DNA of 64,000 bases, from assembly GCA_907165135.1 (NCBI GenBank), contig OU015568.1, positions 5,084,001 through 5,148,000 of the forward strand, in the 5' to 3' direction. The translations under genes and the position numbers were made by a program. The notes beneath the pieces were generated by a model that ran no database searches, was not told where the DNA came from, and saw nothing but the letters and a program-made list of their open reading frames with translations. Shown piece by piece: positions 1-42,347 of this stretch; within the stretch, counting starts at the first letter, position 1, and each line of letters begins with the position of its first letter. This DNA is from Oikopleura dioica (Eukaryota; Animalia; Chordata).

Positions 1-879
1 AGCTCAAAGCCAGTTGGCATTCCCATAGTCGGAGTATAGCACAGCATTCCACTTTGCTCTAGAAATTTATTTGATGAAAAATAGGAAGAATTATCGAGCC
101 CCTTTCATCCCTTTTTTTGCTCTAGAAAGAAATCTTACCTAGGTAAAGAGCATCAGTTTTGAGCTCTGAAATCTCCATGATTGTTTTCTTCTTTGTCTTC
201 TTTTCAAGCTCTCAGAAACTGTAAAATGCGAATACAGTTAGCCGCAGGATAATTTGAAAGTGATCGGATGCAATGACCGCCGGCGCGTTTTCAAGGAGTT
301 TTTCCGTAATCGATTGACACTGATTGAAAAGAATTAGTCGACTCTCATTACTGTTACGAAGCTCTCTTCATCAATCACTTCTGTTTTCTCGCTAACTGTA
401 TGTTCAAACAGAATCTTACCTCGAAAAAGTAAAAAAGGGTGGTTGATTGCAAATTGCTCAGCAGATCGAAATTTTTCAGGTGAAATTTTTAGGGTGCGAA
501 AAAAATGGCTTTTTCGCGGGATCAACGCGGTACTGAGGCGGATTAGACAGTAATCAGCTCATTTTTTTAATAGCTCAGCGGCATCTTCTTCACCACCCGA
601 TCCGGTACTGCTGAGAAATACCGCAATTCCGAATCGCGAGCGCGCTACTAATTTATGAGGCTGCTCATCATCAGAATCGAACGATATTAAAATTATACAT
701 TTTCGGGCGATCATTTTTTATGGAGTAGGATGTGTCCTGGGCGGGTCGGCGGATGATTCTGAAAAATCTGAATTGAGTCTCTTCAGAACTTCTTTAACGA
801 AAGTGAGAAAGAAGCAGAAATCCTGTTTTTAAAAGATGGTTGATGCGACTGAGGTAGGAAGAAAGATCGAAAAAAGAGA

Positions 880-3187
<2,308 letters not shown>

Positions 3188-4962: not shown

Positions 4963-6592
4963 TTAAAATTCCATTGGTTCAAGACCTCTGCAAGTGCCAG
5001 GGCAAGTAGCAGCCACTTCTTCTTCGTGGCAGAAGTCGACAAGTCCGGCACAGGCAGCGTTTTGGTCGCAGAAACCGCAAGTTTTTCGGCAAGATTCCAT
5101 GATTGGCTAGAGATTCAAAATTATTATCTTTTCGAAATTGATTGTTTGTACCTTGAAAACGCTGAAGAGCGCATCCTCGGGAGTCATCGAGCAGAATCGG
5201 TACTGATTCTGGGAGAACTCCTCGCAGTTGATCATAAAATCTTTGCAAGTTGAATTCTCTTCTGCTGGAATTGGGACTGGGCCTTCGCCGCTTGGGTACT
5301 CGGTGACGATTTCAGTGATTTCCTCTGGTGTCGTCGTTGTCATTGGCTCGGTGGTGGTTGTTGTGCTGGTAGTGGAGGTTGGTTCGATGATTTTTGGAGC
5401 TTCAATAGCTTCTTCTCTGAAATTATTGTTTAGAAAAAATTCTAGAGGAACTTGTCTTACTCGATGTTCTCCCAGGGAGCACCGTTTCCACTAGCTTCTG
5501 GCTCTTCAGTAGTAGTGGTGGTAGTAGTAGTGGTCGTGGTAGTAGTGGTGGTTGTTGTTGGTGCCATGGTTGGTGGCATAGTAGGCATAGTGTACTCAAC
5601 TGAAGCACAGGCTCCGCAGGACTTTTGACAGACGTTCAGGATGATTCTGTTTGAGCACTGGTCTCGGAACTTTTGACAATTATTGTATTTATCCTTGCAC
5701 TCAGCAACAGCAGCGACGGGAAAAGCTGGTTTCTCAACGGGGGTCTGAACAACTGGAATTTGTTGGAAAACTGGAGCTTCTTCGACTGGTCGAGGGAAAG
5801 CTGGACGATCGAAGGGAGTGAGGTATGCTTGCTTTGCTGGAAGAACAGGAGCGGGAGGAGCGACTTGTTGGACTTGAACGGGTTGCTGAATTTGAACCTG
5901 GGTGCCGCAAAGGCCGCAAGTTCCAGGGCAAAGGTTTTGGATAGAAGCGTTGTTACAGACTGATTTCCAAGCAGAGCAGCTGGAGAATTTATCAGCGCAA
6001 GAGGTCTGTTGAACTGGAGCCTGGTAGACTGGGACCTGGTAGATTGGCTGGAAAACTGGCTGAACTGGAGCGAGCTGAACTGGCTGGATCTGCTGAACTG
6101 GTCGCGGGAAGAAGTTGTATGCGGGCTTTCTGAAGACTGCTGAGTTCATGACTTGTTGAACTGGATCGACAAAGACTGGTGCAGCTGGAGCTTCTTCAAC
6201 TGGTTCTTGAGCGACTGGTTCTGGTGCAACTTGAACGACTGGAGCAGCTGGGGCTGGGTACTGTTGAGAGACTGAAGACACGCCGCCGCATTTGCCACAA
6301 GTCTTGGCGCAAATTTTATCGATCGATTTGACACCACAGGCGTGTTTCCACGAGCTACAACGGAGGAAATCATCTTGACACAAAGGATCTTCGACAGAGA
6401 CGATCTGAGCGGGCATGGGCTTAGATTGTGTCTGTGTGGATGGTGTGAACATTGAGAACGGATTCCAGAAAGCTTCCACTTCTAGAATTTTTGAATTAGC
6501 GCGGTTTTGCGTGGAGGGCGCTAGAGAAAAGCGGACGGTTACTTACGGTTTTGCGCGGTGAGCGCGGCGAGGAGGGATGCTTGGATCTTCAT
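4963..6592 (-). CDS. Secreted Pro/Gln/Thr-rich protein with 4-5 ShK toxin-like (ShKT) domains
   Basis: Signal-peptide exon MKIQASLLAALTAQN (ATG at 6592, gtaagt donor). ShKT-type 6-Cys units: CQDDFLRCSSWKHACGVKSIDKICAKTCGKC, CADKFSSC..CPGTCGLC, CKDKYNNC..CQKSCGAC, CKDFMINC..SCRKTCGFC, plus a partial fifth. Stop at 4963. Confidence 0.85.
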
Positions 6593-9459
6593 GATGTTTT
6601 TGTGATGTGATTGATTAGAATTGACTTTTTTGGGATAAGCAACTGTTGACTATAAAAATGATTTCCTTGTTGTTTTCAAAGGGCTTTAAATTTCGTGATA
6701 ATGATAGAAGAGTACCCAAAATGATGATGAAAATGAGCGGAAAACAGCAACTTTTTATTGCGAAAGGAATTTCCAGGTCCTCAATAAATTGTTATCTAGA
6801 CTTAGATTTCGATTCTAGTTCGTAAAGTTTTTATGCTTTCCACTAAGCTTTTTGATCAAAATTTTGAGCTACTCCTTGTTAATTTCAAAATCGAAAATTT
6901 GGTTAAAAATTTATGAAGTAAAGAATTCTCTTGAAAGATTTTTTTCTCTGAGCGCTTTCCCACACTTGACTTAGAAACAAAAAGGGATATACGGGGTGTT
7001 GAAAGTGGTTGATAAGGAACACGAAATTGTTCGACGTAATTTCAGTCTTTTCGTGCCTTTTCGAACACACGGATTTCGCCAACTGATGAGGTCCCTTGGT
7101 TGAACGATCAGCGATCGATTGAACGGCCTAGGTGACGCTAGTGAGCGGCGGCGCGCGCGGGTGAGCGAGTATTCACGATTTCTTGCTCTCGAGTGTGGTA
7201 CAATTTAGACCCAGTTTCTCACAGTGCTCATTACATAAGTAAAAGTCTTAACAATCTTGCGCAAGGTGCCCACTCAGATTTGCGAGTTCAGCCGAAACAA
7301 ACAAATTGCAATCAGCTTTTGTCGTTCTCGGCGTTTTTACTTCTCGCAAAGGATTGTTAGATCACACTAAGGTATTTACATGAACAGATAAAAGTATCGA
7401 AATTAACCGAAAAACAAATTGAAATTGGTAGAGAAAAATTAAACAACAATTAGCAATTTCACACTGCTCTCTCAACATAAAATATCCTGATGAAGTTTAT
7501 CCAATAAACGAAAACGTTCGATACAAAATCATATGATCTATTAACGAAGTCAACCCGAAAAGATATAAACAACAATTATTCAAACAAAACGCATAAATAT
7601 TGATGCCGAATCATAAGAAATTATTCATGTCAAGAATAAATACATTCTGAATGTTCTTTCTTTTCATATTCAATGCCCTTGTTAGTTTTAAGAAAAGAAA
7701 ATATCCTTCAGATTTCATTTTTGATGAAACAATTTAAAGGTAGGGATAATCCCTACCTAAATAATTTATTTGATAAATTTCTAGATCATTTTTAAGAAAT
7801 AACGAAAACCATTATACTCAATAAAATGATAATCCATTTGTAATTAAAAAAATTCACCAGACGAGATTTATAAGCGTAACATCTTAGTGTCTACGTCGAC
7901 TTTGGTACCAGTTTTATTTAAAGATTTATCTTACAAAAAATAGCAGAAACATAACTTTTGTTACATAAGGCATTTCTTGATTTTGGTCTATCCGATCTAC
8001 CCAAGGAATCTGCCAATTATCCTCATCCTTTTGATCCCTGTGGCAAATTCTGGCGTCTATTTAAATAGGTTAAAACCTCATCCTTGTTCCTAACTTCAGC
8101 TTTCTATCAGCTCAATGAGCAAATCTCGGTCCCAATTAGCTAATGTTCTCAATTTCCTTTTGTTATGGCTGGTGTTCCCTTAATAGCTTTAATCTTCACG
8201 GCGCGTTTTCGAACCGCGCGGTCGGTCGGCCCCGCGCTCCGGTAGTCTAGTATCTGCCCGAGCTGCTAAAATTTCTGGAATCGACGTCGCCCCCCAGAAT
8301 CGCACTTTTAGCGGAGCACCGCACCTTTGGCGGTGTAGTAGCACCGCGCCCAAGATTACCCAACACCGGATCGCAGCGCTCTAACGTGAGCAAAGCTAAC
8401 AAGCCGAGCTAAGAACCGCATTTGATTTAATTTAACGCCAGAAAACGCTTGTAGTTACAAAGTTAAAAATTACTTAGAAAAAAAATTTAAAAACTATAAT
8501 AAAAATTTTGAAATTTTATTTTCTCTTTTCTTCGAATTTTTATCTCTTTATTAAAATTTTAATATAAGAAATCATGATTTTTTCTGATTACTGTCAAACA
8601 TAAAGAATTAAGGGTCCTACCTTCTGTTTTTGGAAGTCAGAAAATTCCGAGTTTTCTTTTAGCCTCTCTCTTCTCAAAAATACGGCAAGATTTGTGGCCA
8701 CAAAAATTCTACACCCTGGTCAATGTGATCGTGTCACAACCCGTTATTTTGCCTGATTTTACCTACGTTTCCGTCAACAGGAGTCACTTTAGTAACTAGT
8801 TTATAACTTTAGTAAGTTATAAAGGTTGTTGCTTATCCTTTCTCTGATTTTTTGCAAGTAAGGAACTTCGGGCCGCGTTTTTCTGCTGAGGGGGCTCAGC
8901 ATTGGATCTTGGCCAAAAGCCTTCCGGATAGATGGGTTCTTATTCAGCGTTTTCGATCATTACAGTATTTTTTCAGGAAAAACACGAGCGACAAAATATC
9001 CAATTACGCGAACGAAAGATATCCGTATTCAAAAATTGCTCCGCCACTTAGAGATAAATGCCCCTTCTTTGAAAAAGCAACAGCAACTGATTCCTGGTAT
9101 TCAAGCGCCTCTGGGAAGGTAAGCCCTGAAGACTTGAGCTTGAGATAGTCATTTCATAATTCGTTTGAAGATGATACGGTTCTAGATAAATGATTAGGAG
9201 ATTGAGTCCGGATGAATTTGCCGCGCTAGAATAAGTGGACAAAAAACGCTTTCAATGTTCATTTTTACGATGAAAATTGCTGAAAATTGAAGGTTTTGAA
9301 ATCAACTTGAATGTAAATTGTACAAAATCACCCTTTCACGGCGTCGCCATTTTCAAGGTAACCTTATCAAGCCACCCTACCATGACTGATATGATAATGT
9401 ACAAGACTTGCGGTGATATCACCGAACTTTTAAGAAACATAACACGCCTTTACATAATT

Positions 9460-34762: not shown

Positions 34763-35212
34763 CGAGTTCAATATTGGAACTGCTGCTCTAGAAACGCTTT
34801 TTCACCAATAAAAGTCTCAGAAAAACCTTTTCTATTTTATGAATATTTGTTTTACGATAATTCGAAAAAGCGAGGGAGGAATGAACATTTTAAGGTTTGG
34901 TTCATAACTCAAGTATCTAATTTATATTTAAGGTCGCAATTATTTCATCTTTTTCAAAAGGGAGAAAAGAAGATTTTTTCAACAAAAAGCTGAAAAATCC
35001 TGGTGCTTTAAGGCTTCTACTCGGAGTGTTAACTACTGGAATTCTCTAGAACATGATCGCTTCCCTGAAAAGAGGATGGTGCCATCACACTTGACATGCT
35101 CGCCGGTCTGATCGCTGCGGTCAAACCAACAACAAGTGTTAGTGAGATTTCAAGCGGCGTTTGCATAAAATTTTTGCAAGATTATTCATCAAATTGTAGA
35201 TTTTATTTGAGC

Positions 35213-35389
35213 ATGGTTTTACCGAATAGCGAGAATGGGGATTTGTTCTCATATAAATTTAAATTCCTTCTATTCGTTGGGTCTTTCACATTTTTATCAT
35301 CGGCAAATACATATTTTTTTAAAGAGAATGCTCTCAACGAAGAACTTTACAGGTCGCCTACAACTGCTGATTTTAACCAAGATGAGAAG
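35213..35389 (+). pseudogene. Truncated duplicate of the 5' end of the fucosyltransferase-sulfotransferase gene
   Basis: [30 protein letters not shown] matches [30 protein letters not shown] from 36051 onward; the match stops abruptly at GC-rich repeat DNA. Confidence 0.7.
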
Positions 35390-35714
35390 AGTCTCGAGGG
35401 ATTCGCCTGCCCCCTATCCGGCGGGTGACAAAAATGACCGGACCACGCGGGTGACAAGCCCGCGATGCTCGAACTGCTCAACTCCGCAGGGAACAGCGAG
35501 TTGCGGTTGGAAATCGCTTATCAACCGTGGAGAATCATGATCAAAGAGACGTTTTGAGCTCGAGTTTATCCACACAAGGCTCATATTTTCAGAGGATCAA
35601 AATTATTTTCGACCCACAATTTTTAGAACAATACTTTATCCGGTTAAACCATTACACTAAACCATTACACCTACCGGGGTAGTAGGGGGTTATTGTTTGG
35701 GCTGCCCCTAAGTC

Positions 35715-35825
35715 TAAACCTAACCCAGGGGGCTACGCCCCCGGGACCCCCCCACCTAACGCCTAAACCAGGGGGTTTCGCCCCCCGGACCCCCCTTAAG
35801 AGTTCCCAGTCCCTAACCCTAACCA
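35715..35825. repeat. Tandem pair of GGGGGCTACGCCCCC-type hairpin units with CCCTAA-like flanks (related copies near 39195 and 54828)
   Basis: ctaacccagggggctacgcccccgggacccccc and ctaaaccagggggtttcgccccccggacccccc, followed by ccctaaccctaacc. Confidence 0.6.
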
Positions 35826-36050
35826 TTAGCTCAGATTCTAGAGTTATTGGATGGCTCGAATCATAGGCCCGAATGATAACCCCTCTCTTCGCCTACCGGT
35901 TGTGCCTATCTCCTAGCGCGTTTCTCGCGGGTGCCTCAGCTGCTTCACCCAAGCGCCTCTCGCGCGCCCTTTTAGAATTCGCTCTAGCGAGTGCGTAGAG
36001 AAGATCTCTTTTCCCTCTTTTTTGCAAATTATTCAAAGCAAGAATTGTCG

Positions 36051-39000
36051 ATGATTTTATCGAAGATCAAGAATGGCGATTTGTTCAGTTTTAAATTTAA
36101 ATTTCTCTTATTTGTTGGATTTTTCTCATCGTCGATTTTTTATATTTTAAAAGAGAATGCTCTCAATGAAGAACCTTACAGATCCCATGTTACTGTTGAT
36201 TTTGACCACGATGAAAATCTTATCGAGAAAAAAGAGAAGATAATTATTCCAGTCAATCTTTACGGTCCAAACAACCAAATGATGGGCCTCCGTGAAAGTT
36301 TATTCATTACACGTCTCATGAATCGAACTTTTGTTGCTCCTCTATTTTTTCGACATCATACTACTGGGGGTCATCCCTTTTCCGAAGCGGCTCTTTTTAT
36401 CGATCAGGAAAATTTATCCAAAATGGTAAAAACAGTCAACTCAACTGATGTTCGGTCAATTTGCGGCGACTCATTCGATCTCATTCTTGATCATCGTCCA
36501 GCCTCAACATACGGTAGCGCTCGGATTGAAAAAACGTTCAAGTATTTTAAAATGAATTATGAAACATGGAACAGGAAATCGGCATTATCTTAAGCAACCG
36601 AAGTCGTCAAATTTTGGAATTTTTAATTATTGACAAATTGCTAATGGCAATTGTCAATGAAAAATTTATTTATCAATTATCAAGTATTCGATGAAGAAGT
36701 TATGCCGGTCAGAACAGAAAGGGTCCATCTAAAAAACATAGGATCTGAAGGAACTAAAGCTTTGACAAGATCTTTGAGCCAATACGAAGAAAAACGATGC
36801 ATTTTATTAAGGGGGAGGTCGACGAGAATCGGGATTTCCGTGACCAAGAATGCGGGAAACATGAAAAAATAGATTTTCAATTGATTTTTATCTTAACTCC
36901 GCAACTGGTTCTCGACATTTTTTGTCGATAAGGCCCTGTCCTCCTATTTCGAGATATTTGATTTGGAAGTTGAGCTTCGAAAAATATTTTTCATAATAAC
37001 TCGTAACAGAAAGGGAGGGCCCAGTTTTTTATTGATTAAATAGAATGCCCTTATCAAGAGCCTTCGAATGAGCCCACTCCTGTTCACTAACGACGCCCGG
37101 ATGGTGAAAATCATCTTTTTACGTCCGAGGCCTAGTAATGAGTATTTGCACTGACCTCCTGCACCCTTAGCCAAAAATAGGTCGCGCTAATCCCTCTCGG
37201 TGGCGCTTGGCACCGGAAAGTGTCATTAAAATCAGACTTGTTTTAGAAGGAAACTTTCTTATAACATTTTTATCCTGATGATATATCTGCATTTATGAGC
37301 TGAAAACATCTTTTTATAGTTTTTCGAACATTGAGATTTCGAAAATTTCATTAAAATGTCGAAATTCCGACCTTTTTTTGGAAGCAGTTGTAAGAATTTG
37401 AAGGAGATATAGTTGCGCTAGAGAAACCTAAAAGCGCCATGTGAAAGAACACATTGGTATGTCGACGAAGTTTCAGAAAATTATCTCAGCGGGAAGGTCT
37501 TTTCGACAAAAATTGTCAAGCTCCAGTTGGGGGGTTCTTGGGGCGCGCTCCATTTGGGGAGTTTAAGGACCCCCGCGAGATAGTCACCCTCTCGGCCCTA
37601 TAGCGCCAGCTGTGGTTAGATTAAAAGAAATCTCTGAACTCCTTTACTAGATTCTTAGATTAAAATATTTGCCTCTTAAATAAATTTTTTGAAAATTAAA
37701 GTCAATTTCGTCGTGAAAGGCAGTCAAAAATGGCCAATTTCGAAAAAACCGTTTGGGACTCCCTTAAGGGGGGTCGACGAGAATTTTTTCTGAGGTGATC
37801 GTAATTTCGCGTTTACACATGGTCTGTGCAAGAATCTTATATTTTTGGAATCTACAGATCCTCGCGAATCTGTTGAGCCTATAATCATTCGATTAAAATA
37901 AGATTAAGGGTATAAAATTATGAAAAATGTAAATAAAATGACTATTTTATGTGCATTTTCGCGAAAATGCCCCTACTTTAATGGCATTTTTGACCGATTC
38001 TTCTGGCGAAAATTTTTTCTACTTCTCGCCGGTTAATTTTTTCAGCCCTTTTTCATTTGCCGTTAAATTCAGATTTTGCCTTTCTGATCCGCATTTTTGG
38101 TCACGGAAATCCCGATTCTCGTTGACCCCCTCCTTAAGATACACATATGGTTATCTCGACTGGACTTCGCTGTTCCGCAATCAATTTAAAAATTTGAAGC
38201 CCTTCGTCGACTCAGATTTCGAGCTCATCAAAGAAACCATCAAAGCAACTGTTCGACCGAAGAAAATCAAGAGTCTAGCTGAGAAAATTGTGTCAATCAT
38301 CAAATTCGAAGGACTTAAAGAGCACAAAATGGCGGCTTTCCATTGGAGATACGATTTAAATGACTGGGGAGCTCATGAGGATGATTATAAGGCACTTATG
38401 AAAAATGTGCTTGCAATTAGGGACAGACCCGAATACTTAGCGGAATTCATTCAACAAGAGCTTGGGAAGAGGAACATTTCGAGACTGGTGATCTTTTGTC
38501 CTCCAAGAAATGGGTGAATTTTTTCAGAAAAAACGCACGAATAAGACATAAAATTTGACCCAAAATTAATGATCACGGCTTCGTGGAGCAGCTTCGTTCA
38601 ATCATTGATGATAAAAAAATTTTCACTGAAAAAGAAATTCTTTCACTTTTTCGATCTGATCTGGATAAAATTGATGGCGACACCGAGATCTCTCTTGTCG
38701 AACAAGAGATTTGCTTTCTTTCTGATTTTTTCCTGTTCTCAGAAAAATCTTCTTGGAGCATGAATATAAATCTCGAACGAGTTATTGATGGAAGAACTGA
38801 TAATTTATTCAATTTGGATTTTCCTATTATAAAAGAAAATTGCGATATGGGGATAAGAATGGGTAGCAAAGACGAGTTTGGGGTTTTTCCTTTAGTTTCT
38901 TTTCCAGGCAGCGGAAATACGTAAGTACCAAAAAATTGTTATAATTGATAACCGGATACCCTCTGTTCGCCGGGATATCCTCGGTTCGCCGGGATTCGGG

Positions 39001-40607
39001 GAAAAAATTCCCGGCGAACCGAGCGTCATCCCTGATATTTTTTCAGGCACTACAAAGGAGCTTACTTTTTTGGTAACCAGGCCCAATAATTCGTTGCAAC
39101 GAAATATTCGTTAGGAAAACGAATTATTCGTCAGAGTAAAAAACTTTGATGAAGTAGTAAACCGACCCAAAATGAACAGAACCCCCCTTTAGATCTAACC
39201 CAGGGGGCTTTGCCCTTCGGAAACTCTCGTCATTGAGCTTATTTACCTAACCCTTACCCCTTACCCTAATCATAATCCTAACCAATCATATGAGAACCTT
39301 AGGAATATCATTATCGCTTCATACGCTTACTTTTTTCGTAGTTGGACACGAATGCTGCTTGAAAAATCAACTGGAATTTATACAGGAAGCATTTACAATG
39401 ACCAACCATTGTTCAAAGCTGGTATGCTCGGCGAAATCACTCTTCCTAAAGATGGTGAGACTCTCTTCCAAAAATCGCATGACATCAAGGACGAACAAAT
39501 TTCAAATCCAAGAGGGATACTTTTTCTTCTTCGAAACCCATTTGAAGCGGTTGTGGCCGAATGGAAACGTAGATTGACAAAGGGACATACGTCAGATGTA
39601 GAAGAGAATGTTTTCAAGGGCGAAGAATGGCAAAATAAGGGCAGTTATTTTTTGAAGAAATGGAGAACTCTTGCGAAAGAAGTAATTGACGTTTATTTAG
39701 GAAGGGTCGATTCCAATGTACTTAGGGTTTTTATCAGATCAGTTTGCGAGGCGAAGTTAATATATTTAAATATTCTGAAAAGAAAATAAATTGATCTTTT
39801 GAAAGAAAACAAAAACGTTTCACTTCACGTATTTTTTTATGAAAACTTGAAGGCTGATGCTTTACATGAAATGGAACAAATTCTTGATTTTATTGCGCAA
39901 GAGGATTATTTTCATGTTTCTGATCGTAGCACTCGAATGAATTGTTTGAAAAATGTAAGTCCTACTTGCAATACGAAACATGGCTTTTCAAATTTATTCA
40001 AATTTGCTTTTAAGGGGGTAGAACTAGGATTTTCGAAAATAGCCAATTCTAGACCGGTGCTCAAAGCCAGGCAAGCTAAGATATTCAAATTCTCTCTTCA
40101 GCTGAAGATAGAGCAAACTTAGATCTAATAACCTTTTTCTTAAAATATTTTTCGTCATCAAATTTTTGGCGGTAAAGAGGGAAACACCAACCTATCTCAT
40201 CGAAAATCGCCATTTTAGCCTATTCGCGTCCTCAAATTTCTCGAGTCACGTGACTAGTCAAATTTTTTTAATTTTATTTTTTGATAGTTTAACGCGTTTT
40301 CTCGCAACATCTATGAGGAAATTTCGTTAGAATAAGTAAAAACAGGTTTTTCTTATTTAAAAGGGCTCTCGAATATCACTTTTTTCGAAAAATCTAGTTC
40401 TACCCCCTTAAATATTATTTATTTGAGACGCTTGAAGAAACTGAAAAATTTCATCGACCAAAGAAGAAGCCGTCTTTCGAATATTTTACGAAACCAATGA
40501 TTGAAAAAGGAAATCAATATATCAATGAAGTTTACGATCTATTGGAACAGAACAATTTCCCTACTTTTGAGAAACGGAGCTATTTGAAACAAAACACAGC
40601 TTCGTAA
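36051..40607 (+). CDS. Type II Golgi-type protein: O-fucosyltransferase-like domain fused to a WSCD-type PAPS sulfotransferase domain
   Basis: N-terminal signal anchor; [38 protein letters not shown] and [23 protein letters not shown] (O-FucT motifs). The same exon continues to [11 protein letters not shown]|[20 protein letters not shown], then [17 protein letters not shown] and FHRPK (WSCD-type sulfotransferase). Confidence 0.8.
36811..38133. mobile_element. 1323-bp non-autonomous TIR element with TTAA TSD inserted in a coding exon
   Basis: TTAA at 36807-36810 and 38134-38137; ~45-bp TIRs GGGGGAGGTCGACGAGAATCGGGATTTCCGTGACCAAGAATGCGG; flanks rejoin to [14 protein letters not shown]. Confidence 0.92.
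40014..40407. mobile_element. 394-bp intronic MITE with TTAA TSD and GGGGG termini
   Basis: TTAA-GGGGGTAGAACTAGGATTTTCGAAAA ... TTTTCGAAAAATCTAGTTCTACCCCC-TTAA. Confidence 0.88.
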
Positions 40608-40642
40608 GTTAAATAGAATATTGAAAATATGGCTGTCTGAAT

Positions 40643-42347
40643 TTATTTTGCGATAATTCGCCTAAACGGAATGAAAGTAATTATGCTGAAAACAAGCAGG
40701 GCAAACATTATGCAGACATTTGTTAGCAGATTTATCGATGTGTTGATGAAGAAGCAGATCGCGCAGGAACCAGCATCAAGGAACTAGAAAATCGTGAGTC
40801 ATCAAATTTGCGGGCATCAAACCTGATAGAGGGCAAAAGCATAGGATGTCTGGCCCGCAAAACCTTCCGTTACAGAAGAATAGACGACATTCTTATAGAC
40901 TGTGTAGCAAAAACCATTTGCAAAAGCGATATAAAGAACGAGTTCTCTTTTCACAGAATCAAATCCCTTTGGCTGTTCGTCAGTAGCCGCGATATTTGCG
41001 GAAAACGGATGATTAAGCAGGACGAAGACCAACATACTAAGCATCAAAACACTGTTGCAAAGCACAATTGTCACTCTTGAAAAGCGATTCATGATTTTTG
41101 AACCAAAGACAAAAATTCCACCGCCGATTATTCCTCCAACACCGGTCATTAATCCGCATAGTCCTACAGCAGCACTAGCATTTTCGAGGTTCTTTGAATT
41201 TCCGACTGCTGTTGGGTAGACGCCAGTGTAAAATCCGAGGAAAAATCCATCGAAAATGATGAAAGGCGCGAATAAAAGCATCTTTTTCGTGACTTTAAGC
41301 GGCTCATAAGCAAAATTACTACTGAAAATTCAATATTTCTAGAGCCATTCCTAAAAGCTTGAAAGAGCATTTGACTGAATTCACGAACTTCTGTATTCCA
41401 GAGCTCCCATCATCATTTTTGCTTTTGAATCGTTTCTCCAACCCGAGGCATTGTGACTTCAGCGTAAACAGCAATCCACAACCGGTCGAACCGAGAATCG
41501 CGAAAATCGTAAAAATCTGCTTCCTCATCTCAGTATCCACGTACTCTTTCCCCTGCCAAGCGAACATAATGTACAAGTTTCCAGCAAGAAGAGAGCATTG
41601 AAAGATCCCCCAAAAAGTCCCGCTATTTCGCGCCATCAGTTTTTCTGTCCCAGATTGGTGGTGTAGAAAATCTCCTTGAGCCGTCCAAAGAAATGCCGCT
41701 CCAAGACCGTTGAGTGCCGAAACACTGTAGAGAAAGCCTGGAACTGGGTTGAGATACGTCAATATGTAGAGAACATAGGTCGCGGCGGCGATGAACTAGA
41801 ATTTCGGTCACTTTTGAAAGCAAGAAAACTCTTACCATCGTCGTCTTATGGCCAACAAAAGCAACTACCCCAGGAGCAGCGAAATTCGACAAGCAAAAGG
41901 TAATATAAACGATCGACAGGGAAATGTACCCATCTCCGAATTTCTGGTCAACGAACGATTTCTTCACTTTTTTCTCTTTTTCTTCAAAAGTAATGTTCTC
42001 TCCCTTCGACTCTTCCGGCCAGTTAGAGCTGTTGAACTCAAAAAAGGCGTCGTCAATTTCTAGGTTTTCAACAGTTTCGAGTTTAAGCGAGTCGATGATG
42101 TATTTTCCAGCCATGGAAGTTGTTAAAAACGCTTTATTGAGAAATAAGAATTGAATTTTTTGATTTTTTTTCATGAAAAATATACTTTTTCTCTCCCTTT
42201 TCCTGTAAAAACCAGCATAAAAGCGAACCCACACATGAGCACGTTAAACATTTTCCACCCATTAGTCAGCCCTTCTTCGCTTTCTTCTACTTTCAGTTCC
42301 TCTTTCTGCATCTTTTCGCCCTCTTCTTGACTTGGAATATCTTTCAT
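40643..42347 (-). CDS. MFSD11: UNC93-like MFS transporter
   Basis: MFNVLMCGFAFMLVFTAF, GDGYISLSIVY..SNFAAPGVVAFVG, GLGAAFLWTAQG, RNSGTFWGIFQCSLLAGNLY, GFYTGVYPTAVG. Confidence 0.85.

What the first reader, a model, noticed from the sequence alone, without database searches (positions are those of the whole stretch)
38566..39690. Fusion of an O-fucosyltransferase-like domain and a WSCD-type sulfotransferase in one polypeptide
Seen: within one uninterrupted exon (ORF 38583-38924) the O-FucT C-terminal motif ([30 protein letters not shown]) runs directly into [11 protein letters not shown] phase-2 GT-AG intron (38921-39341) completes the PAPS-binding loop SFPGSGNTW and TGIYTGSIY. There is a single N-terminal signal anchor. 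Established: these motifs belong to the GDP-fucose O-fucosyltransferase family and to WSCD1/2-type sulfotransferases. Inference: a bifunctional Golgi enzyme that could build sulfated fucosylated glycans, for example for the larvacean house or mucus. I do not know of a described protein with this architecture.
Basis: partly seen in the sequence, partly recalled or inferred. Interest (0 to 1): 0.8.

Follow-up and report, generated by a model that had tools for sequence, protein, structure and literature searches.

The report
Fucosyltransferase-like domain fused to sulfotransferase
A planktonic tunicate gene encodes one membrane-anchored Golgi-type protein that joins a fucosyltransferase-like sugar-adding domain directly to a WSCD-type sulfate-adding domain; the arrangement recurs in four paralogs and I found no description of it, but no RNA could be read to show that this copy is expressed.

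Summary
One uninterrupted exon (38570-38920) carries the C-terminal O-fucosyltransferase motif and runs into [10 protein letters not shown] phase-2 GT-AG intron (38921-39341) then completes the PAPS loop PGSGNT|W.

I rebuilt a 7-exon, 680-codon + strand gene (36051-40607). It has a signal anchor, a divergent POFUT-like GT-B domain and a complete WSCD-type sulfotransferase domain. It has no WSC domains.

- **Sulfotransferase part:** its four exons map end to end on a profile of WSCD-type relatives.
- **Conservation of the fusion:** the junction exon is conserved in three more paralogs of this genome and in three independent metagenome contigs. One contig shows the same intron at only 55 nt.
- **Selection:** dN/dS against that homologue is 0.27.
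- **Absence elsewhere:** none of 45 long relatives of the sulfotransferase exon carries an O-FucT domain.

Caveats for this copy: a 1.3-kb transposon lies in an exon, possibly spliced out in frame. One intron ends in AA where the homologue has AG. Two introns are GA-AG. RNA runs gave no reads on the gene.

Paralog B adds a third domain (Gal-3-O-sulfotransferase). The scan's first readers had already flagged the same architecture on other DNA of this genome (s1-342420, s1-371372). Function is inferred, not tested.

The parts
36051..36574 (+). Exon 1: start Met, short cytosolic tail, hydrophobic signal anchor, and the N-terminal half of the O-FucT-like domain with motif I ([27 protein letters not shown]).
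   Evidence: ORF; in-phase translation without a stop. G72-P-N-N-Q, R81, E82, R92 and P97 are invariant in 8 own-genome relatives. The only PDB hits of that profile are POFUT1, aligned at NQ...LNRTL.VP, with a weak E of 0.27. Extension to 36574 is preferred over the GT at 36542 because the intron-less paralog C aligns through [10 protein letters not shown].
36575..36712 (+). Intron 1, 138 nt, GA-AG, phase 2 (boundary codon AGA). An alternative canonical GT donor at 36542 would drop 11 residues.
   Evidence: The acceptor CCGGTCAG|A is conserved in metagenome homologue L031. GA-AG introns are frequent in Oikopleura dioica (PMC7072748).
36713..36817 (+). Exon 2 ([34 protein letters not shown]), the part of the ancestral exon upstream of a transposon insertion.
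   Evidence: Matches paralog B residues 7-42 and P0219/L031; no stop.
36818..38138 (+). TTAA-flanked terminal-inverted-repeat transposon inside the ancestral exon. A GT 8 nt inside its left end and the AG of its right TTAAG would remove it in frame, adding 2 codons. Splicing is not shown.
   Evidence: TIRs and TTAA read. Homologue L031 has the two exon halves contiguous (CATTTTATTAAAATACACG). Frame check. Earlier scan note s1-393139.
38139..38513 (+). Exon 3: middle of the O-FucT-like domain with motif II ([12 protein letters not shown], the HxR arginine) and VIFCPPRN.
   Evidence: HWRYD is conserved across the alignment. Paralog B's contiguous exon 3+4 ORF hits Pfam O-FucT positions 158-325 at E 5.8e-5.
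38514..38569 (+). Intron 3, 56 nt, phase 2. GT donor, but the last two bases are AA where homologues L031/L040 have AG. This is either a non-canonical acceptor or a splice-site defect of this copy.
   Evidence: Alignment; L040 sequence. Synonymous differences in D(H/N)GFV(E/D) show that the stretch after 38569 is coding, which rules out the AGs at 38587/38590 as the ancestral acceptor.
38570..38920 (+). Exon 4, the junction exon. It holds O-FucT motif III ([30 protein letters not shown]), about 20 linker residues, then the start of the sulfotransferase domain ([27 protein letters not shown] + AC of Thr).
   Evidence: Motif III aligns with human POFUT2 residues 335-413, E 1.3e-3. The tail maps to positions 258-284 of the WSCD-type profile. 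The same exon content is seen in paralogs B, C and D and in P0221-P0223.
38921..39341 (+). Intron 4, 421 nt, GTAAGT...TCGTAG, phase 2. It splits the Thr codon of the 5'-PSB motif PGSGNT|W.
   Evidence: There is an intron at the same position and phase in L040 (55 nt), L039, L041 and L046, and in paralogs B, C and D. The motif is contiguous in intron-less relatives L029 and L009.
39342..39700 (+). Exon 5: core of the sulfotransferase domain ([18 protein letters not shown]...QKSH...[26 protein letters not shown]...).
   Evidence: E 5e-48 to the WSCD-type profile, positions 286-400. 807 library hits, the long ones being WSC+Sulfotransfer_1 proteins. The family-invariant W, R, G, H, R and P are all present.
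39701..39805 (+). Intron 5, 105 nt, GA-AG, phase 1 (boundary codon GAA).
   Evidence: The donor G|GAAGGG is conserved at the homologous place in paralog B. Paralogs C and D have no intron there and give a protein of nearly the same length (about one residue different).
39806..39954 (+). Exon 6 ([29 protein letters not shown]...RMNCLKN).
   Evidence: Profile positions 405-442, E 8e-11. Weak Pfam Sulfotransfer_1 hit at positions 155-179.
39955..40427 (+). Intron 6, 473 nt, GTAAGT...TTTGAG, phase 0. It contains repeat-derived sequence.
   Evidence: A segment at 40014-40064 matches an insertion in paralog B's exon 1.
40428..40607 (+). Exon 7: C-terminal end of the sulfotransferase domain ([30 protein letters not shown]...), stop TAA at 40605-40607.
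   Evidence: Profile positions 444-494 of 503, E 1.2e-10. There is no Gal3ST domain downstream in the window.

Best explanation
Window 36051-40607 (+ strand) holds one seven-exon gene. Its 680-residue product is a type II, Golgi-type membrane protein with two luminal catalytic domains placed back to back. The first is a divergent GT-B glycosyltransferase of the POFUT1/POFUT2/FUT8/NodZ fucosyltransferase clan. The second is a PAPS-dependent sulfotransferase of the WSCD1/WSCD2 type.

The glycosyltransferase-like domain occupies the place that the stem and WSC domains hold in vertebrate WSCD proteins. The fusion is old enough to have given at least four paralogs in this genome, and it is under purifying selection.

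Inferred mechanism: the first domain adds a sugar, most likely fucose from GDP-fucose, to a secreted glycoprotein or glycan. The tethered sulfotransferase then sulfates that sugar or a neighbouring one in the same Golgi passage.

Shown: exon structure, domain identities and conservation of the junction. Inferred: transcription and splicing of this copy, activity, donor, acceptor and the tissue where it acts.
For: **Junction in one ORF**
- The motif-III-to-P-loop stretch is a single ORF.
- The intron is phase 2 and rebuilds PGSGNT|W. P, G, T and W of this motif are the residues whose mutation inactivates mouse WSCD1/2 (PMC9304399).

**Sulfotransferase domain complete across four exons**
- The four exons map colinearly and without gaps on a WSCD-type profile: 258-284, 286-400 (E 5e-48), 405-442 and 444-494 of 503.
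- The best named relatives of the intron-less paralog's sulfotransferase domain are sialate:O-sulfotransferase 1/2, at E 1e-23 to 1e-32.

**O-FucT-like domain**
- Pfam O-FucT matches paralog B's exon 3+4 ORF at positions 158-325 (5.8e-5), and exon-1 relatives at positions 11-80.
- Own-genome relative L020 exceeds the Pfam cut-off.
- A profile hit to POFUT2 reaches E 1.3e-3.
- The top 50 Foldseek hits of the AF2 model are all POFUT2, POFUT1, FUT8 or NodZ.
- The nearest named Atlas clusters all belong to that clan.

**Same order and strand elsewhere**
- Paralogs B, C and D share the arrangement.
- So do ENA contigs L039, L040 and L041. L040 shows exon-intron(55 nt)-exon across the junction.

**Gene integrity and context**
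- dN/dS is 0.27 over 336 codons against L031/L040.
- All exons are open in phase, totalling 2043 nt.
- A preprint reports strong 'wsdc1' sulfotransferase expression in giant cells of the house-building epithelium (10.64898/2026.03.31.715263). It does not say which paralog.
Against: - **No RNA support.** Four RNA runs of the same species label gave no reads on the gene. The only matches were 33-nt partial hits from a related transcript.
- **Transposon in an exon.** This copy carries a 1.3-kb transposon inside an exon.
- **Non-AG acceptor.** One intron ends in AA where the homologue has AG.
- **Non-canonical donors.** Two introns need GA donors.
- **Weak Pfam support on the window itself.** Scanned exon by exon, Pfam gives nothing significant, and even paralog B stays below the O-FucT gathering score.
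- **Limits of the selection test.** dN/dS measures past selection, not the present state.
- **Joined protein untested.** It was never scanned or folded.
Confidence: 0.72

Rival explanations
1. The fused family is real, but the copy in this window is a decaying or null allele. The transposon in the exon and the AG-to-AA change at the intron 3 acceptor prevent a correct mRNA, so this locus makes no two-domain protein.
For: A transposon lies in the exon and is absent from homologue L031. Homologues L031 and L040 have an AG acceptor where the window has AA, and there is no in-phase AG nearby. No RNA reads were found. The genome holds three other fused paralogs that could cover the function.
Against: Every exon is still open in phase, and all family-invariant residues are intact. 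The transposon ends offer an in-frame GT-AG pair. Other scan notes on this genome describe exon-borne transposons proposed to be spliced out. Non-canonical sites are unusually common in this species. The empty RNA result is not a test, because nothing showed that the runs carry this strain or tissue.
Confidence: 0.2
2. These are two separate genes or transcripts. An O-FucT-like gene ends at the TAA that overlaps the donor at 38922-38924, and a downstream sulfotransferase gene starts at Met 39352, as in a trans-spliced operon.
For: Unspliced, the exon ends in TAA right after ...GSGNT. An in-frame ATG (MLLEKSTG) lies 11 nt after the acceptor. From general knowledge, this species has operons with very short spacers.
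Against: The downstream product would lack the P-loop PGSGNTW and any signal anchor. The upstream product would carry a useless half motif. The split motif, phase and GT-AG sites are conserved in all fused paralogs and in four metagenome contigs. The motif is contiguous in intron-less relatives. Profile positions 284 and 286 abut across the intron.
Confidence: 0.04
3. This is one polypeptide, but the O-FucT-like domain no longer transfers sugar. It acts as a glycan- or protein-binding module that steers the sulfotransferase, taking over the role of the WSC domains of vertebrate WSCD1/2.
For: It sits where the WSC domains sit in WSCD1/2, and the genome shows no WSC domain at all. The domain is very divergent and sub-threshold in Pfam.
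Against: The three motifs that bind GDP-fucose or carry the catalytic arginine in POFUTs are kept and nearly invariant across paralogs: GPNNQ...R.E...NRT..P, HWRYD and S..EQE.C..SD.F.YS..S.WS.N..LER. In other lineages the same domain is fused to a beta-1,4-galactosyltransferase, which fits an enzyme working in a chain.
Confidence: 0.15

Closest known systems
WSCD1 / WSCD2 (sialate:O-sulfotransferase 1 and 2), vertebrates and ascidians
   Same: Type II membrane topology and homologous catalytic domain. The intron-less paralog's sulfotransferase domain is 33-40% identical to named WSCD1/2 (E to 1e-32), and the window's core exon is about 40-44% identical to WSC+Sulfotransfer_1 library proteins. 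The 5'-PSB motif PGSGNTW is identical, and the invariant K.H, RNP and YE.L are conserved.
   Different: There are no WSC domains in the protein, or anywhere in this genome. A glycosyltransferase-like domain stands in their place. The genome shows no GT29 sialyltransferase and no CMP-sialic acid synthetase match, so sialic acid is an unlikely acceptor.
POFUT1 (GT65) and POFUT2 (GT68), GDP-fucose protein O-fucosyltransferases
   Same: GT-B fold of the C-terminal half (Foldseek E 1e-5, probability 1.0). Motif I is POFUT1-like, the HxR arginine motif is present, and motif III aligns with POFUT2 residues 335-413.
   Different: Only 10-15% identity. It is below the Pfam gathering score. It belongs to a lineage-specific expansion, with at least 29 exon-1-like matches in this genome. 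It is membrane-anchored, whereas from general knowledge POFUT1/2 are soluble ER-resident enzymes. It is fused to a second enzyme. Donor and acceptor are unknown.
Own-genome paralog B (G000 C1:337.6-342.2 kb; L025)
   Same: Same exon order, the same P-loop intron and the same GA-AG intron. Identity is 65-73% over the O-FucT-like C-half and the sulfotransferase exons, and about 43-46% over exon 1.
   Different: B's last exon runs on into a Gal-3-O-sulfotransferase domain (Pfam E 1.7e-28), giving three catalytic domains. The window gene stops 5 residues after the point where B continues. B has no intron between exons 3 and 4.
Bifunctional Golgi glycan enzymes such as NDST (N-deacetylase/N-sulfotransferase) and LARGE (two glycosyltransferase domains), from general knowledge
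   Same: One type II polypeptide carries two catalytic domains that act in succession on the same glycan.
   Different: None of them pairs a fucosyltransferase-clan GT-B domain with a WSCD-type sulfotransferase. No sequence relationship to the N-terminal domain was tested here.
Chondroitin synthase fused to a carbohydrate sulfotransferase-like domain in the same genome (scan note s1-378104)
   Same: Another glycosyltransferase-sulfotransferase fusion reported for this genome.
   Different: The domain families are different. I did not check that note.

Membership tests
GDP-fucose protein O-fucosyltransferase family (Pfam PF10250; POFUT1/POFUT2 clan) | Score above the Pfam gathering cut-off (31.5 bits) for PF10250 | tested here: inconclusive
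   The window exons scanned singly give no hit. Paralog B's exon 3+4 ORF scores 23.3 bits, E 5.8e-5, at positions 158-325. Own-genome relative L020 scores 37 bits over positions 11-323 and matches window exon 1 at E 2.3e-8. The joined domain was not scanned.
GDP-fucose protein O-fucosyltransferase family (Pfam PF10250; POFUT1/POFUT2 clan) | GT-B fold with a nucleotide-binding C-terminal Rossmann domain like that of POFUT1/2 | tested here: met
   AF2 model of paralog B's ORF has a core pLDDT of 80-95. The top 50 Foldseek PDB hits are all POFUT2, POFUT1, FUT8 or NodZ, with E 1e-5 to 3e-3. This was tested on the 70%-identical paralog, not on the window protein.
GDP-fucose protein O-fucosyltransferase family (Pfam PF10250; POFUT1/POFUT2 clan) | Conserved motifs I (G..NQ...NRT..P), II (HxR...D, catalytic Arg) and III (D/EQ..C....F.G/S..S.FS....ER) | tested here: met
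   All three are present in the window exons. They are invariant or nearly so in alignments A2, A4 and A5. Motif III aligns with POFUT2 (E 1.3e-3). Motif I aligns with POFUT1 (E 0.27).
GDP-fucose protein O-fucosyltransferase family (Pfam PF10250; POFUT1/POFUT2 clan) | Transfers fucose from GDP-fucose to Ser/Thr of EGF or TSR repeats | not testable with these tools
   Needs an enzyme assay.
WSCD1/WSCD2 sialate:O-sulfotransferases | Homologous sulfotransferase catalytic domain with the 5'-PSB motif P..G.TW and a 3'-PB region | tested here: met
   The motif residues are named in PMC9304399. The window reads FPGSGNT|W and [15 protein letters not shown].
WSCD1/WSCD2 sialate:O-sulfotransferases | Two WSC domains (PF01822) between the membrane anchor and the catalytic domain | tested here: not met
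   No PF01822 hit in any exon or in the whole genome at E 0.01 or better. 24 of 45 long relatives have it.
WSCD1/WSCD2 sialate:O-sulfotransferases | Type II membrane protein with a single N-terminal anchor | tested here: inconclusive
   A 16-residue uncharged hydrophobic stretch follows the start Met. No 19-residue window reached the Kyte-Doolittle mean of 1.6 used, and no dedicated predictor was run.
WSCD1/WSCD2 sialate:O-sulfotransferases | Acceptor is sialic acid (8-O-sulfation) | not testable with these tools
   Indirect evidence speaks against it. The genome has no PF00777 (GT29) match, though that search had no valid control. It also has no PF02348 (CMP-sialic acid synthetase) match, and here the controls rang in 11 of 14 genomes.

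The most novel reading that the evidence does not exclude
Larvaceans have built a lineage-specific, combinatorial set of 'assembly-line' Golgi enzymes. A divergent fucosyltransferase-like domain is welded to a WSCD-type sulfotransferase, to that plus a Gal-3-O-sulfotransferase, or (in other lineages) to a beta-1,4-galactosyltransferase. In an animal that seems to lack sialic acid synthesis, the WSCD-type domain would have switched acceptor, for example to fucose or galactose just added by its partner. The proteins would then make sulfated glycans of the filter house in one pass.
Probability: 0.35. Interest if true: 0.75.

Novelty: new variant of a known kind. Interest (0 to 1): 0.55.

Why it matters
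Both catalytic domains belong to known families, and two-domain Golgi enzymes exist. I found no description of a fucosyltransferase-clan domain fused head to tail with a WSCD-type sulfotransferase.

If both halves are active, the protein would be a natural example of substrate channelling between glycosylation and sulfation. It would also give a handle on what WSCD-type enzymes do in an animal without an evident sialic acid pathway.

The paralog series offers a ready-made comparison for asking how domain fusion shapes glycan products. It comprises two-domain proteins, a three-domain protein, sulfotransferase-only proteins, and fusions to a galactosyltransferase in other lineages. It may also bear on the chemistry of the larvacean house.

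The window copy is in addition a test case for whether exon-borne transposons and non-AG acceptors are tolerated by this species' spliceosome.

Tried and rejected
- **RNA evidence.** Read laying with three bulk and one single-cell run on 35000-40800 gave 0, 15, 8 and 1 reads. All were partial 33-nt matches at 39448-39480 with unlike flanks. That is no test of expression or splicing.
- **Pfam, exon by exon.** Nothing significant.
- **Single-exon searches against PDB sequences.** Nothing relevant.
- **Direct splice of exon 1 (GT at 36542) to 38139.** My first model. Rejected because paralog B and P0219 show a conserved extra exon at 36713-36817.
- **AG acceptors at 38587/38590 for intron 3.** Rejected as the ancestral site. 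The stretch before them shows synonymous-only differences from L040, and the phase fails with the conserved GG|GT donor.
- **GT donors at 39682 or 39691 for intron 5.** No in-phase AG exists. The GA donor at 39701 is conserved in paralog B.
- **A Gal3ST domain downstream of the stop in the window.** None found.
- **O-FucT-like exons upstream of the own-genome beta4GalT ORF on C2.** None within 8 kb.
- **Any O-FucT-bearing protein among the best 150 relatives of the sulfotransferase exon.** None by phmmer with exons 1-3, and none by Pfam in the 45 long ones.
- **The look-up of encoding contigs for P0003.** Not on record.
- **Joined protein.** All searches used single exons or uninterrupted ORFs by reference.


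Full report
**The observation**

ORF 38583-38924 reads ...[80 protein letters not shown]. A consensus donor AC|GTAAGT lies at 38921 and an acceptor TTTCGTAG| ends at 39341. Joining them in phase 2 gives codon ACT and the string [24 protein letters not shown]. A hydrophobic segment follows the first Met at 36051.

**Gene model**

Reading outwards and comparing with relatives, I arrive at seven exons on the + strand:
- 36051-36574
- 36713-36817
- 38139-38513
- 38570-38920
- 39342-39700
- 39806-39954
- 40428-40607

Each exon is open in its phase. The boundary codons are AGA, AGA, GGT, ACT and GAA. The total is 2043 nt, that is 680 codons plus TAA.

My first model spliced exon 1 straight to 38139. 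It was wrong: paralog B and a metagenome protein (P0219) show a conserved extra exon at 36713-36817.

**The sulfotransferase half**

Exon 5 alone finds 807 proteins in the 1.84-billion library. The long ones are WSC + Sulfotransfer_1 proteins.

An intron-less own-genome paralog (L009) has a sulfotransferase domain 42% identical to exon 5. Its best named relatives are sialate:O-sulfotransferase 1/2 (WSCD1/2) of vertebrates and Styela, at E down to 4.5e-32.

I built a profile from 45 long relatives. The window's exons map on it colinearly and without gaps:

| Window exon | Profile positions (of 503) | E-value |
|---|---|---|
| Tail of exon 4 | 258-284 | 3.5e-6 |
| Exon 5 | 286-400 | 5e-48 |
| Exon 6 | 405-442 | 8e-11 |
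| Exon 7 | 444-494 | 1.2e-10 |

So the four exons rebuild one complete catalytic domain, and every exon junction falls between adjacent profile positions.

All family-invariant residues are present. The 5'-PSB motif PGSGNTW is the one whose P, G, T and W were mutated to inactivate mouse WSCD1/2 (PMC9304399).

The protein has no WSC domain, and neither does the whole genome.

**The glycosyltransferase-like half**

The window exons scanned singly give nothing in Pfam or against PDB sequences. The assignment rests on relatives and is consistent from five directions:
1. In paralog B, exons 3 and 4 form one 281-residue ORF that matches Pfam O-FucT positions 158-325 (E 5.8e-5, below the cut-off). 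Exon-1-like ORFs elsewhere in the genome match positions 11-80.
2. An own-genome relative of exon 1 (L020, E 2.3e-8) exceeds the Pfam cut-off over positions 11-323.
3. A profile of the C-terminal half hits human POFUT2 at its C-terminal motif (E 1.3e-3). The N-terminal profile hits only POFUT1, at NQ...LNRTL.VP, with a weak E of 0.27.
4. An AlphaFold model of paralog B's ORF (core pLDDT 80-95) gives POFUT2, POFUT1, FUT8 and NodZ as all of its top 50 Foldseek PDB hits.
5. The nearest named ESM-Atlas clusters all belong to that clan.

The HWRYD motif (the HxR arginine), GPNNQ...NRT..P and the motif III serines are conserved across the paralogs. The domain is therefore a divergent member of the POFUT-type fucosyltransferase clan. 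Its donor and acceptor are not known.

**Is the fusion real?**

No RNA could be read. Four runs with the species label gave no reads on the gene. The only matches were 33-nt partial hits whose flanks translate as another WSCD-like sulfotransferase. The case is therefore comparative.
- The exon that holds both the O-FucT motif III and the start of the P-loop is one ORF in the window and in own-genome paralogs B (C1, 0.34 Mb), C (C1, 0.97 Mb) and D (C4, 3.03 Mb). In each, the N-terminal O-FucT-like exons lie upstream and the sulfotransferase exons downstream on the same strand.
- Three independent ENA metagenome contigs carry the same exon (P0221-P0223).
- Contig L040 is a homologue of the window gene. 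Within 825 nt it shows the end of exon 3, a GT-AG intron, the junction exon, a 55-nt AC|GTAAGT...TCGTAG|TTGG intron and then exon 5.
- The intron splits the same Thr codon in every fused copy and in sulfotransferase-only relatives (L046). Intron-less relatives have PGSGNTW contiguous.
- Against L031/L040 the window gene has dN/dS 0.27 over 336 codons, with similar values in both halves.

A two-gene or operon reading would leave a sulfotransferase without a P-loop or anchor. I rate it at about 4%.

**State of this particular copy**

Four features call for caution.
1. A TTAA-flanked inverted-repeat transposon (36811-38133, with flanking TTAA target-site copies at 36807-36810 and 38134-38137) sits in what is one exon in homologue L031. 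A GT just inside its left end and the AG of its right TTAAG would remove it in frame with two added codons. This was already noted by the scan (s1-393139).
2. Intron 3 (38514-38569) has the conserved GG|GT donor but ends in AA, where L031/L040 have AG. No in-phase AG is near. Synonymous differences show that the following D-H-G-F-V-E was coding until recently. This is a non-canonical acceptor, a null allele or a base error.
3. Introns 1 and 5 use GA donors.
   - For intron 5 the donor G|GAAGGG is conserved in paralog B. The intron-less paralogs C and D give a protein of nearly the same length, about one residue different.
   - GA-AG introns are known to be frequent in Oikopleura dioica (PMC7072748).
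4. All exons remain open and all invariant residues are intact.

I give about 20% to the reading that this copy is a non-functional member of a real fused family.

**Family context**

- Paralog B's last exon continues into a Gal-3-O-sulfotransferase domain (Pfam E 1.7e-28), so B has three catalytic domains.
- The window gene, C and D stop shortly after the WSCD-type domain.
- L009 and a tandem neighbour of C are WSCD-type + Gal3ST.
- Three further loci are sulfotransferase-only.
- In JGI metagenome contigs the same O-FucT-like domain runs straight into a beta-1,4-galactosyltransferase (P0220, L048-L051). This genome's orthologous galactosyltransferase has no such exon within 8 kb.
- Of 45 long relatives of the sulfotransferase exon, 24 have WSC domains and none has O-FucT or Gal3ST.
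- The paper library holds nothing on Oikopleura fucosyltransferases or on such a fusion.
- A 2026 preprint reports strong 'wsdc1' expression in giant cells of the house-building epithelium, without saying which paralog.

**Likely mechanism**

The inferred product is a type II Golgi protein in which a sugar-adding domain and a sulfate-adding domain are separated by about 20 residues. They most plausibly act in succession on the same acceptor.

The genome shows no GT29 sialyltransferase and no CMP-sialic acid synthetase match. The second search had working controls. The acceptor of the WSCD-type domain is therefore probably not sialic acid. None of this is tested.

**Verdict**

- **Observation:** confirmed.
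- **Interpretation:** partly supported. The architecture holds; function and expression are untested.
- **Novelty:** a new variant of a known kind. Both domain families are known, but the combination appears undescribed.
- **Earlier scan notes:** the scan's first readers flagged the same architecture on other DNA of this genome (s1-342420 at the place of paralog C; s1-371372 on another contig). Those notes had not been followed up.

Noticed in passing
L025 (G000 C1:335000-343500), ORF 6102-7166: Paralog B's last exon continues from the WSCD-type sulfotransferase into a Gal-3-O-sulfotransferase domain (PF06990, E 1.7e-28). The predicted protein would have three catalytic domains: O-FucT-like, WSCD-type and Gal3ST.
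   Followed up: partly
L009 (G000 C1:13485321-13488653), ORF 112-2130, minus strand: A single-exon 672-residue ORF holds a membrane anchor, a WSCD-type sulfotransferase and a Gal-3-O-sulfotransferase (PF06990 E 1.8e-26, PF00685 E 1e-7). It is a double sulfotransferase.
   Followed up: partly
L032 (P0220) and L048-L051, JGI metagenome contigs: The same O-FucT-like domain (54-63% identical to window and paralog B) runs in one ORF into a beta-1,4-galactosyltransferase domain. This is a glycosyltransferase-glycosyltransferase fusion in other, presumably larvacean, lineages. The own genome's 71-76% identical galactosyltransferase (C2:7584019-7584975) has no such exon within 8 kb upstream.
   Followed up: partly
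window 35213-35398 (+): A partial duplicate of the 5' end of exon 1 (64% identity over 59 residues, including the hydrophobic anchor) lies about 840 nt upstream of the start codon. It is either an alternative first exon or a remnant.
   Followed up: no
window 38514-38569: The short intron has imperfect inverted ends (GGGTGAATTTT...AAAATTTGACCC) and ends in TTAA. Its acceptor AG in homologues L031/L040 is AA here.
   Followed up: partly
window 40602-40609: The stop codon TAA of the gene lies inside a perfect donor-like GTAAGT (TTC|GTAAGT). No downstream exon for it was found in the window.
   Followed up: partly
window 39448-39480: RNA reads of runs X5 and X6 (14 and 6 reads) match only these 33 bases at 90-95%. 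Their flanks translate as GGFIGEFTEP..., another WSCD-like sulfotransferase. So a relative is expressed in those samples, while this gene gave no reads.
   Followed up: no
whole genome G000: No match to Pfam GT29 sialyltransferase, CMP-sialic acid synthetase (controls positive) or the WSC domain. There are at least 19 WSCD-type sulfotransferase exon matches and at least 29 O-FucT-like exon-1 matches.
   Followed up: partly
P0004 (725 aa, library protein of unknown organism): Two WSCD-type sulfotransferase domains in tandem in one protein, each with its own PGxGNTW motif.
   Followed up: no
window 40014-40064 (intron 6) and L025 about 3040-3085: A short repeat (translating [15 protein letters not shown] in B) occurs in the window's intron 6 and interrupts paralog B's exon 1 reading frame. 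It is probably a mobile element shared by both loci.
   Followed up: no
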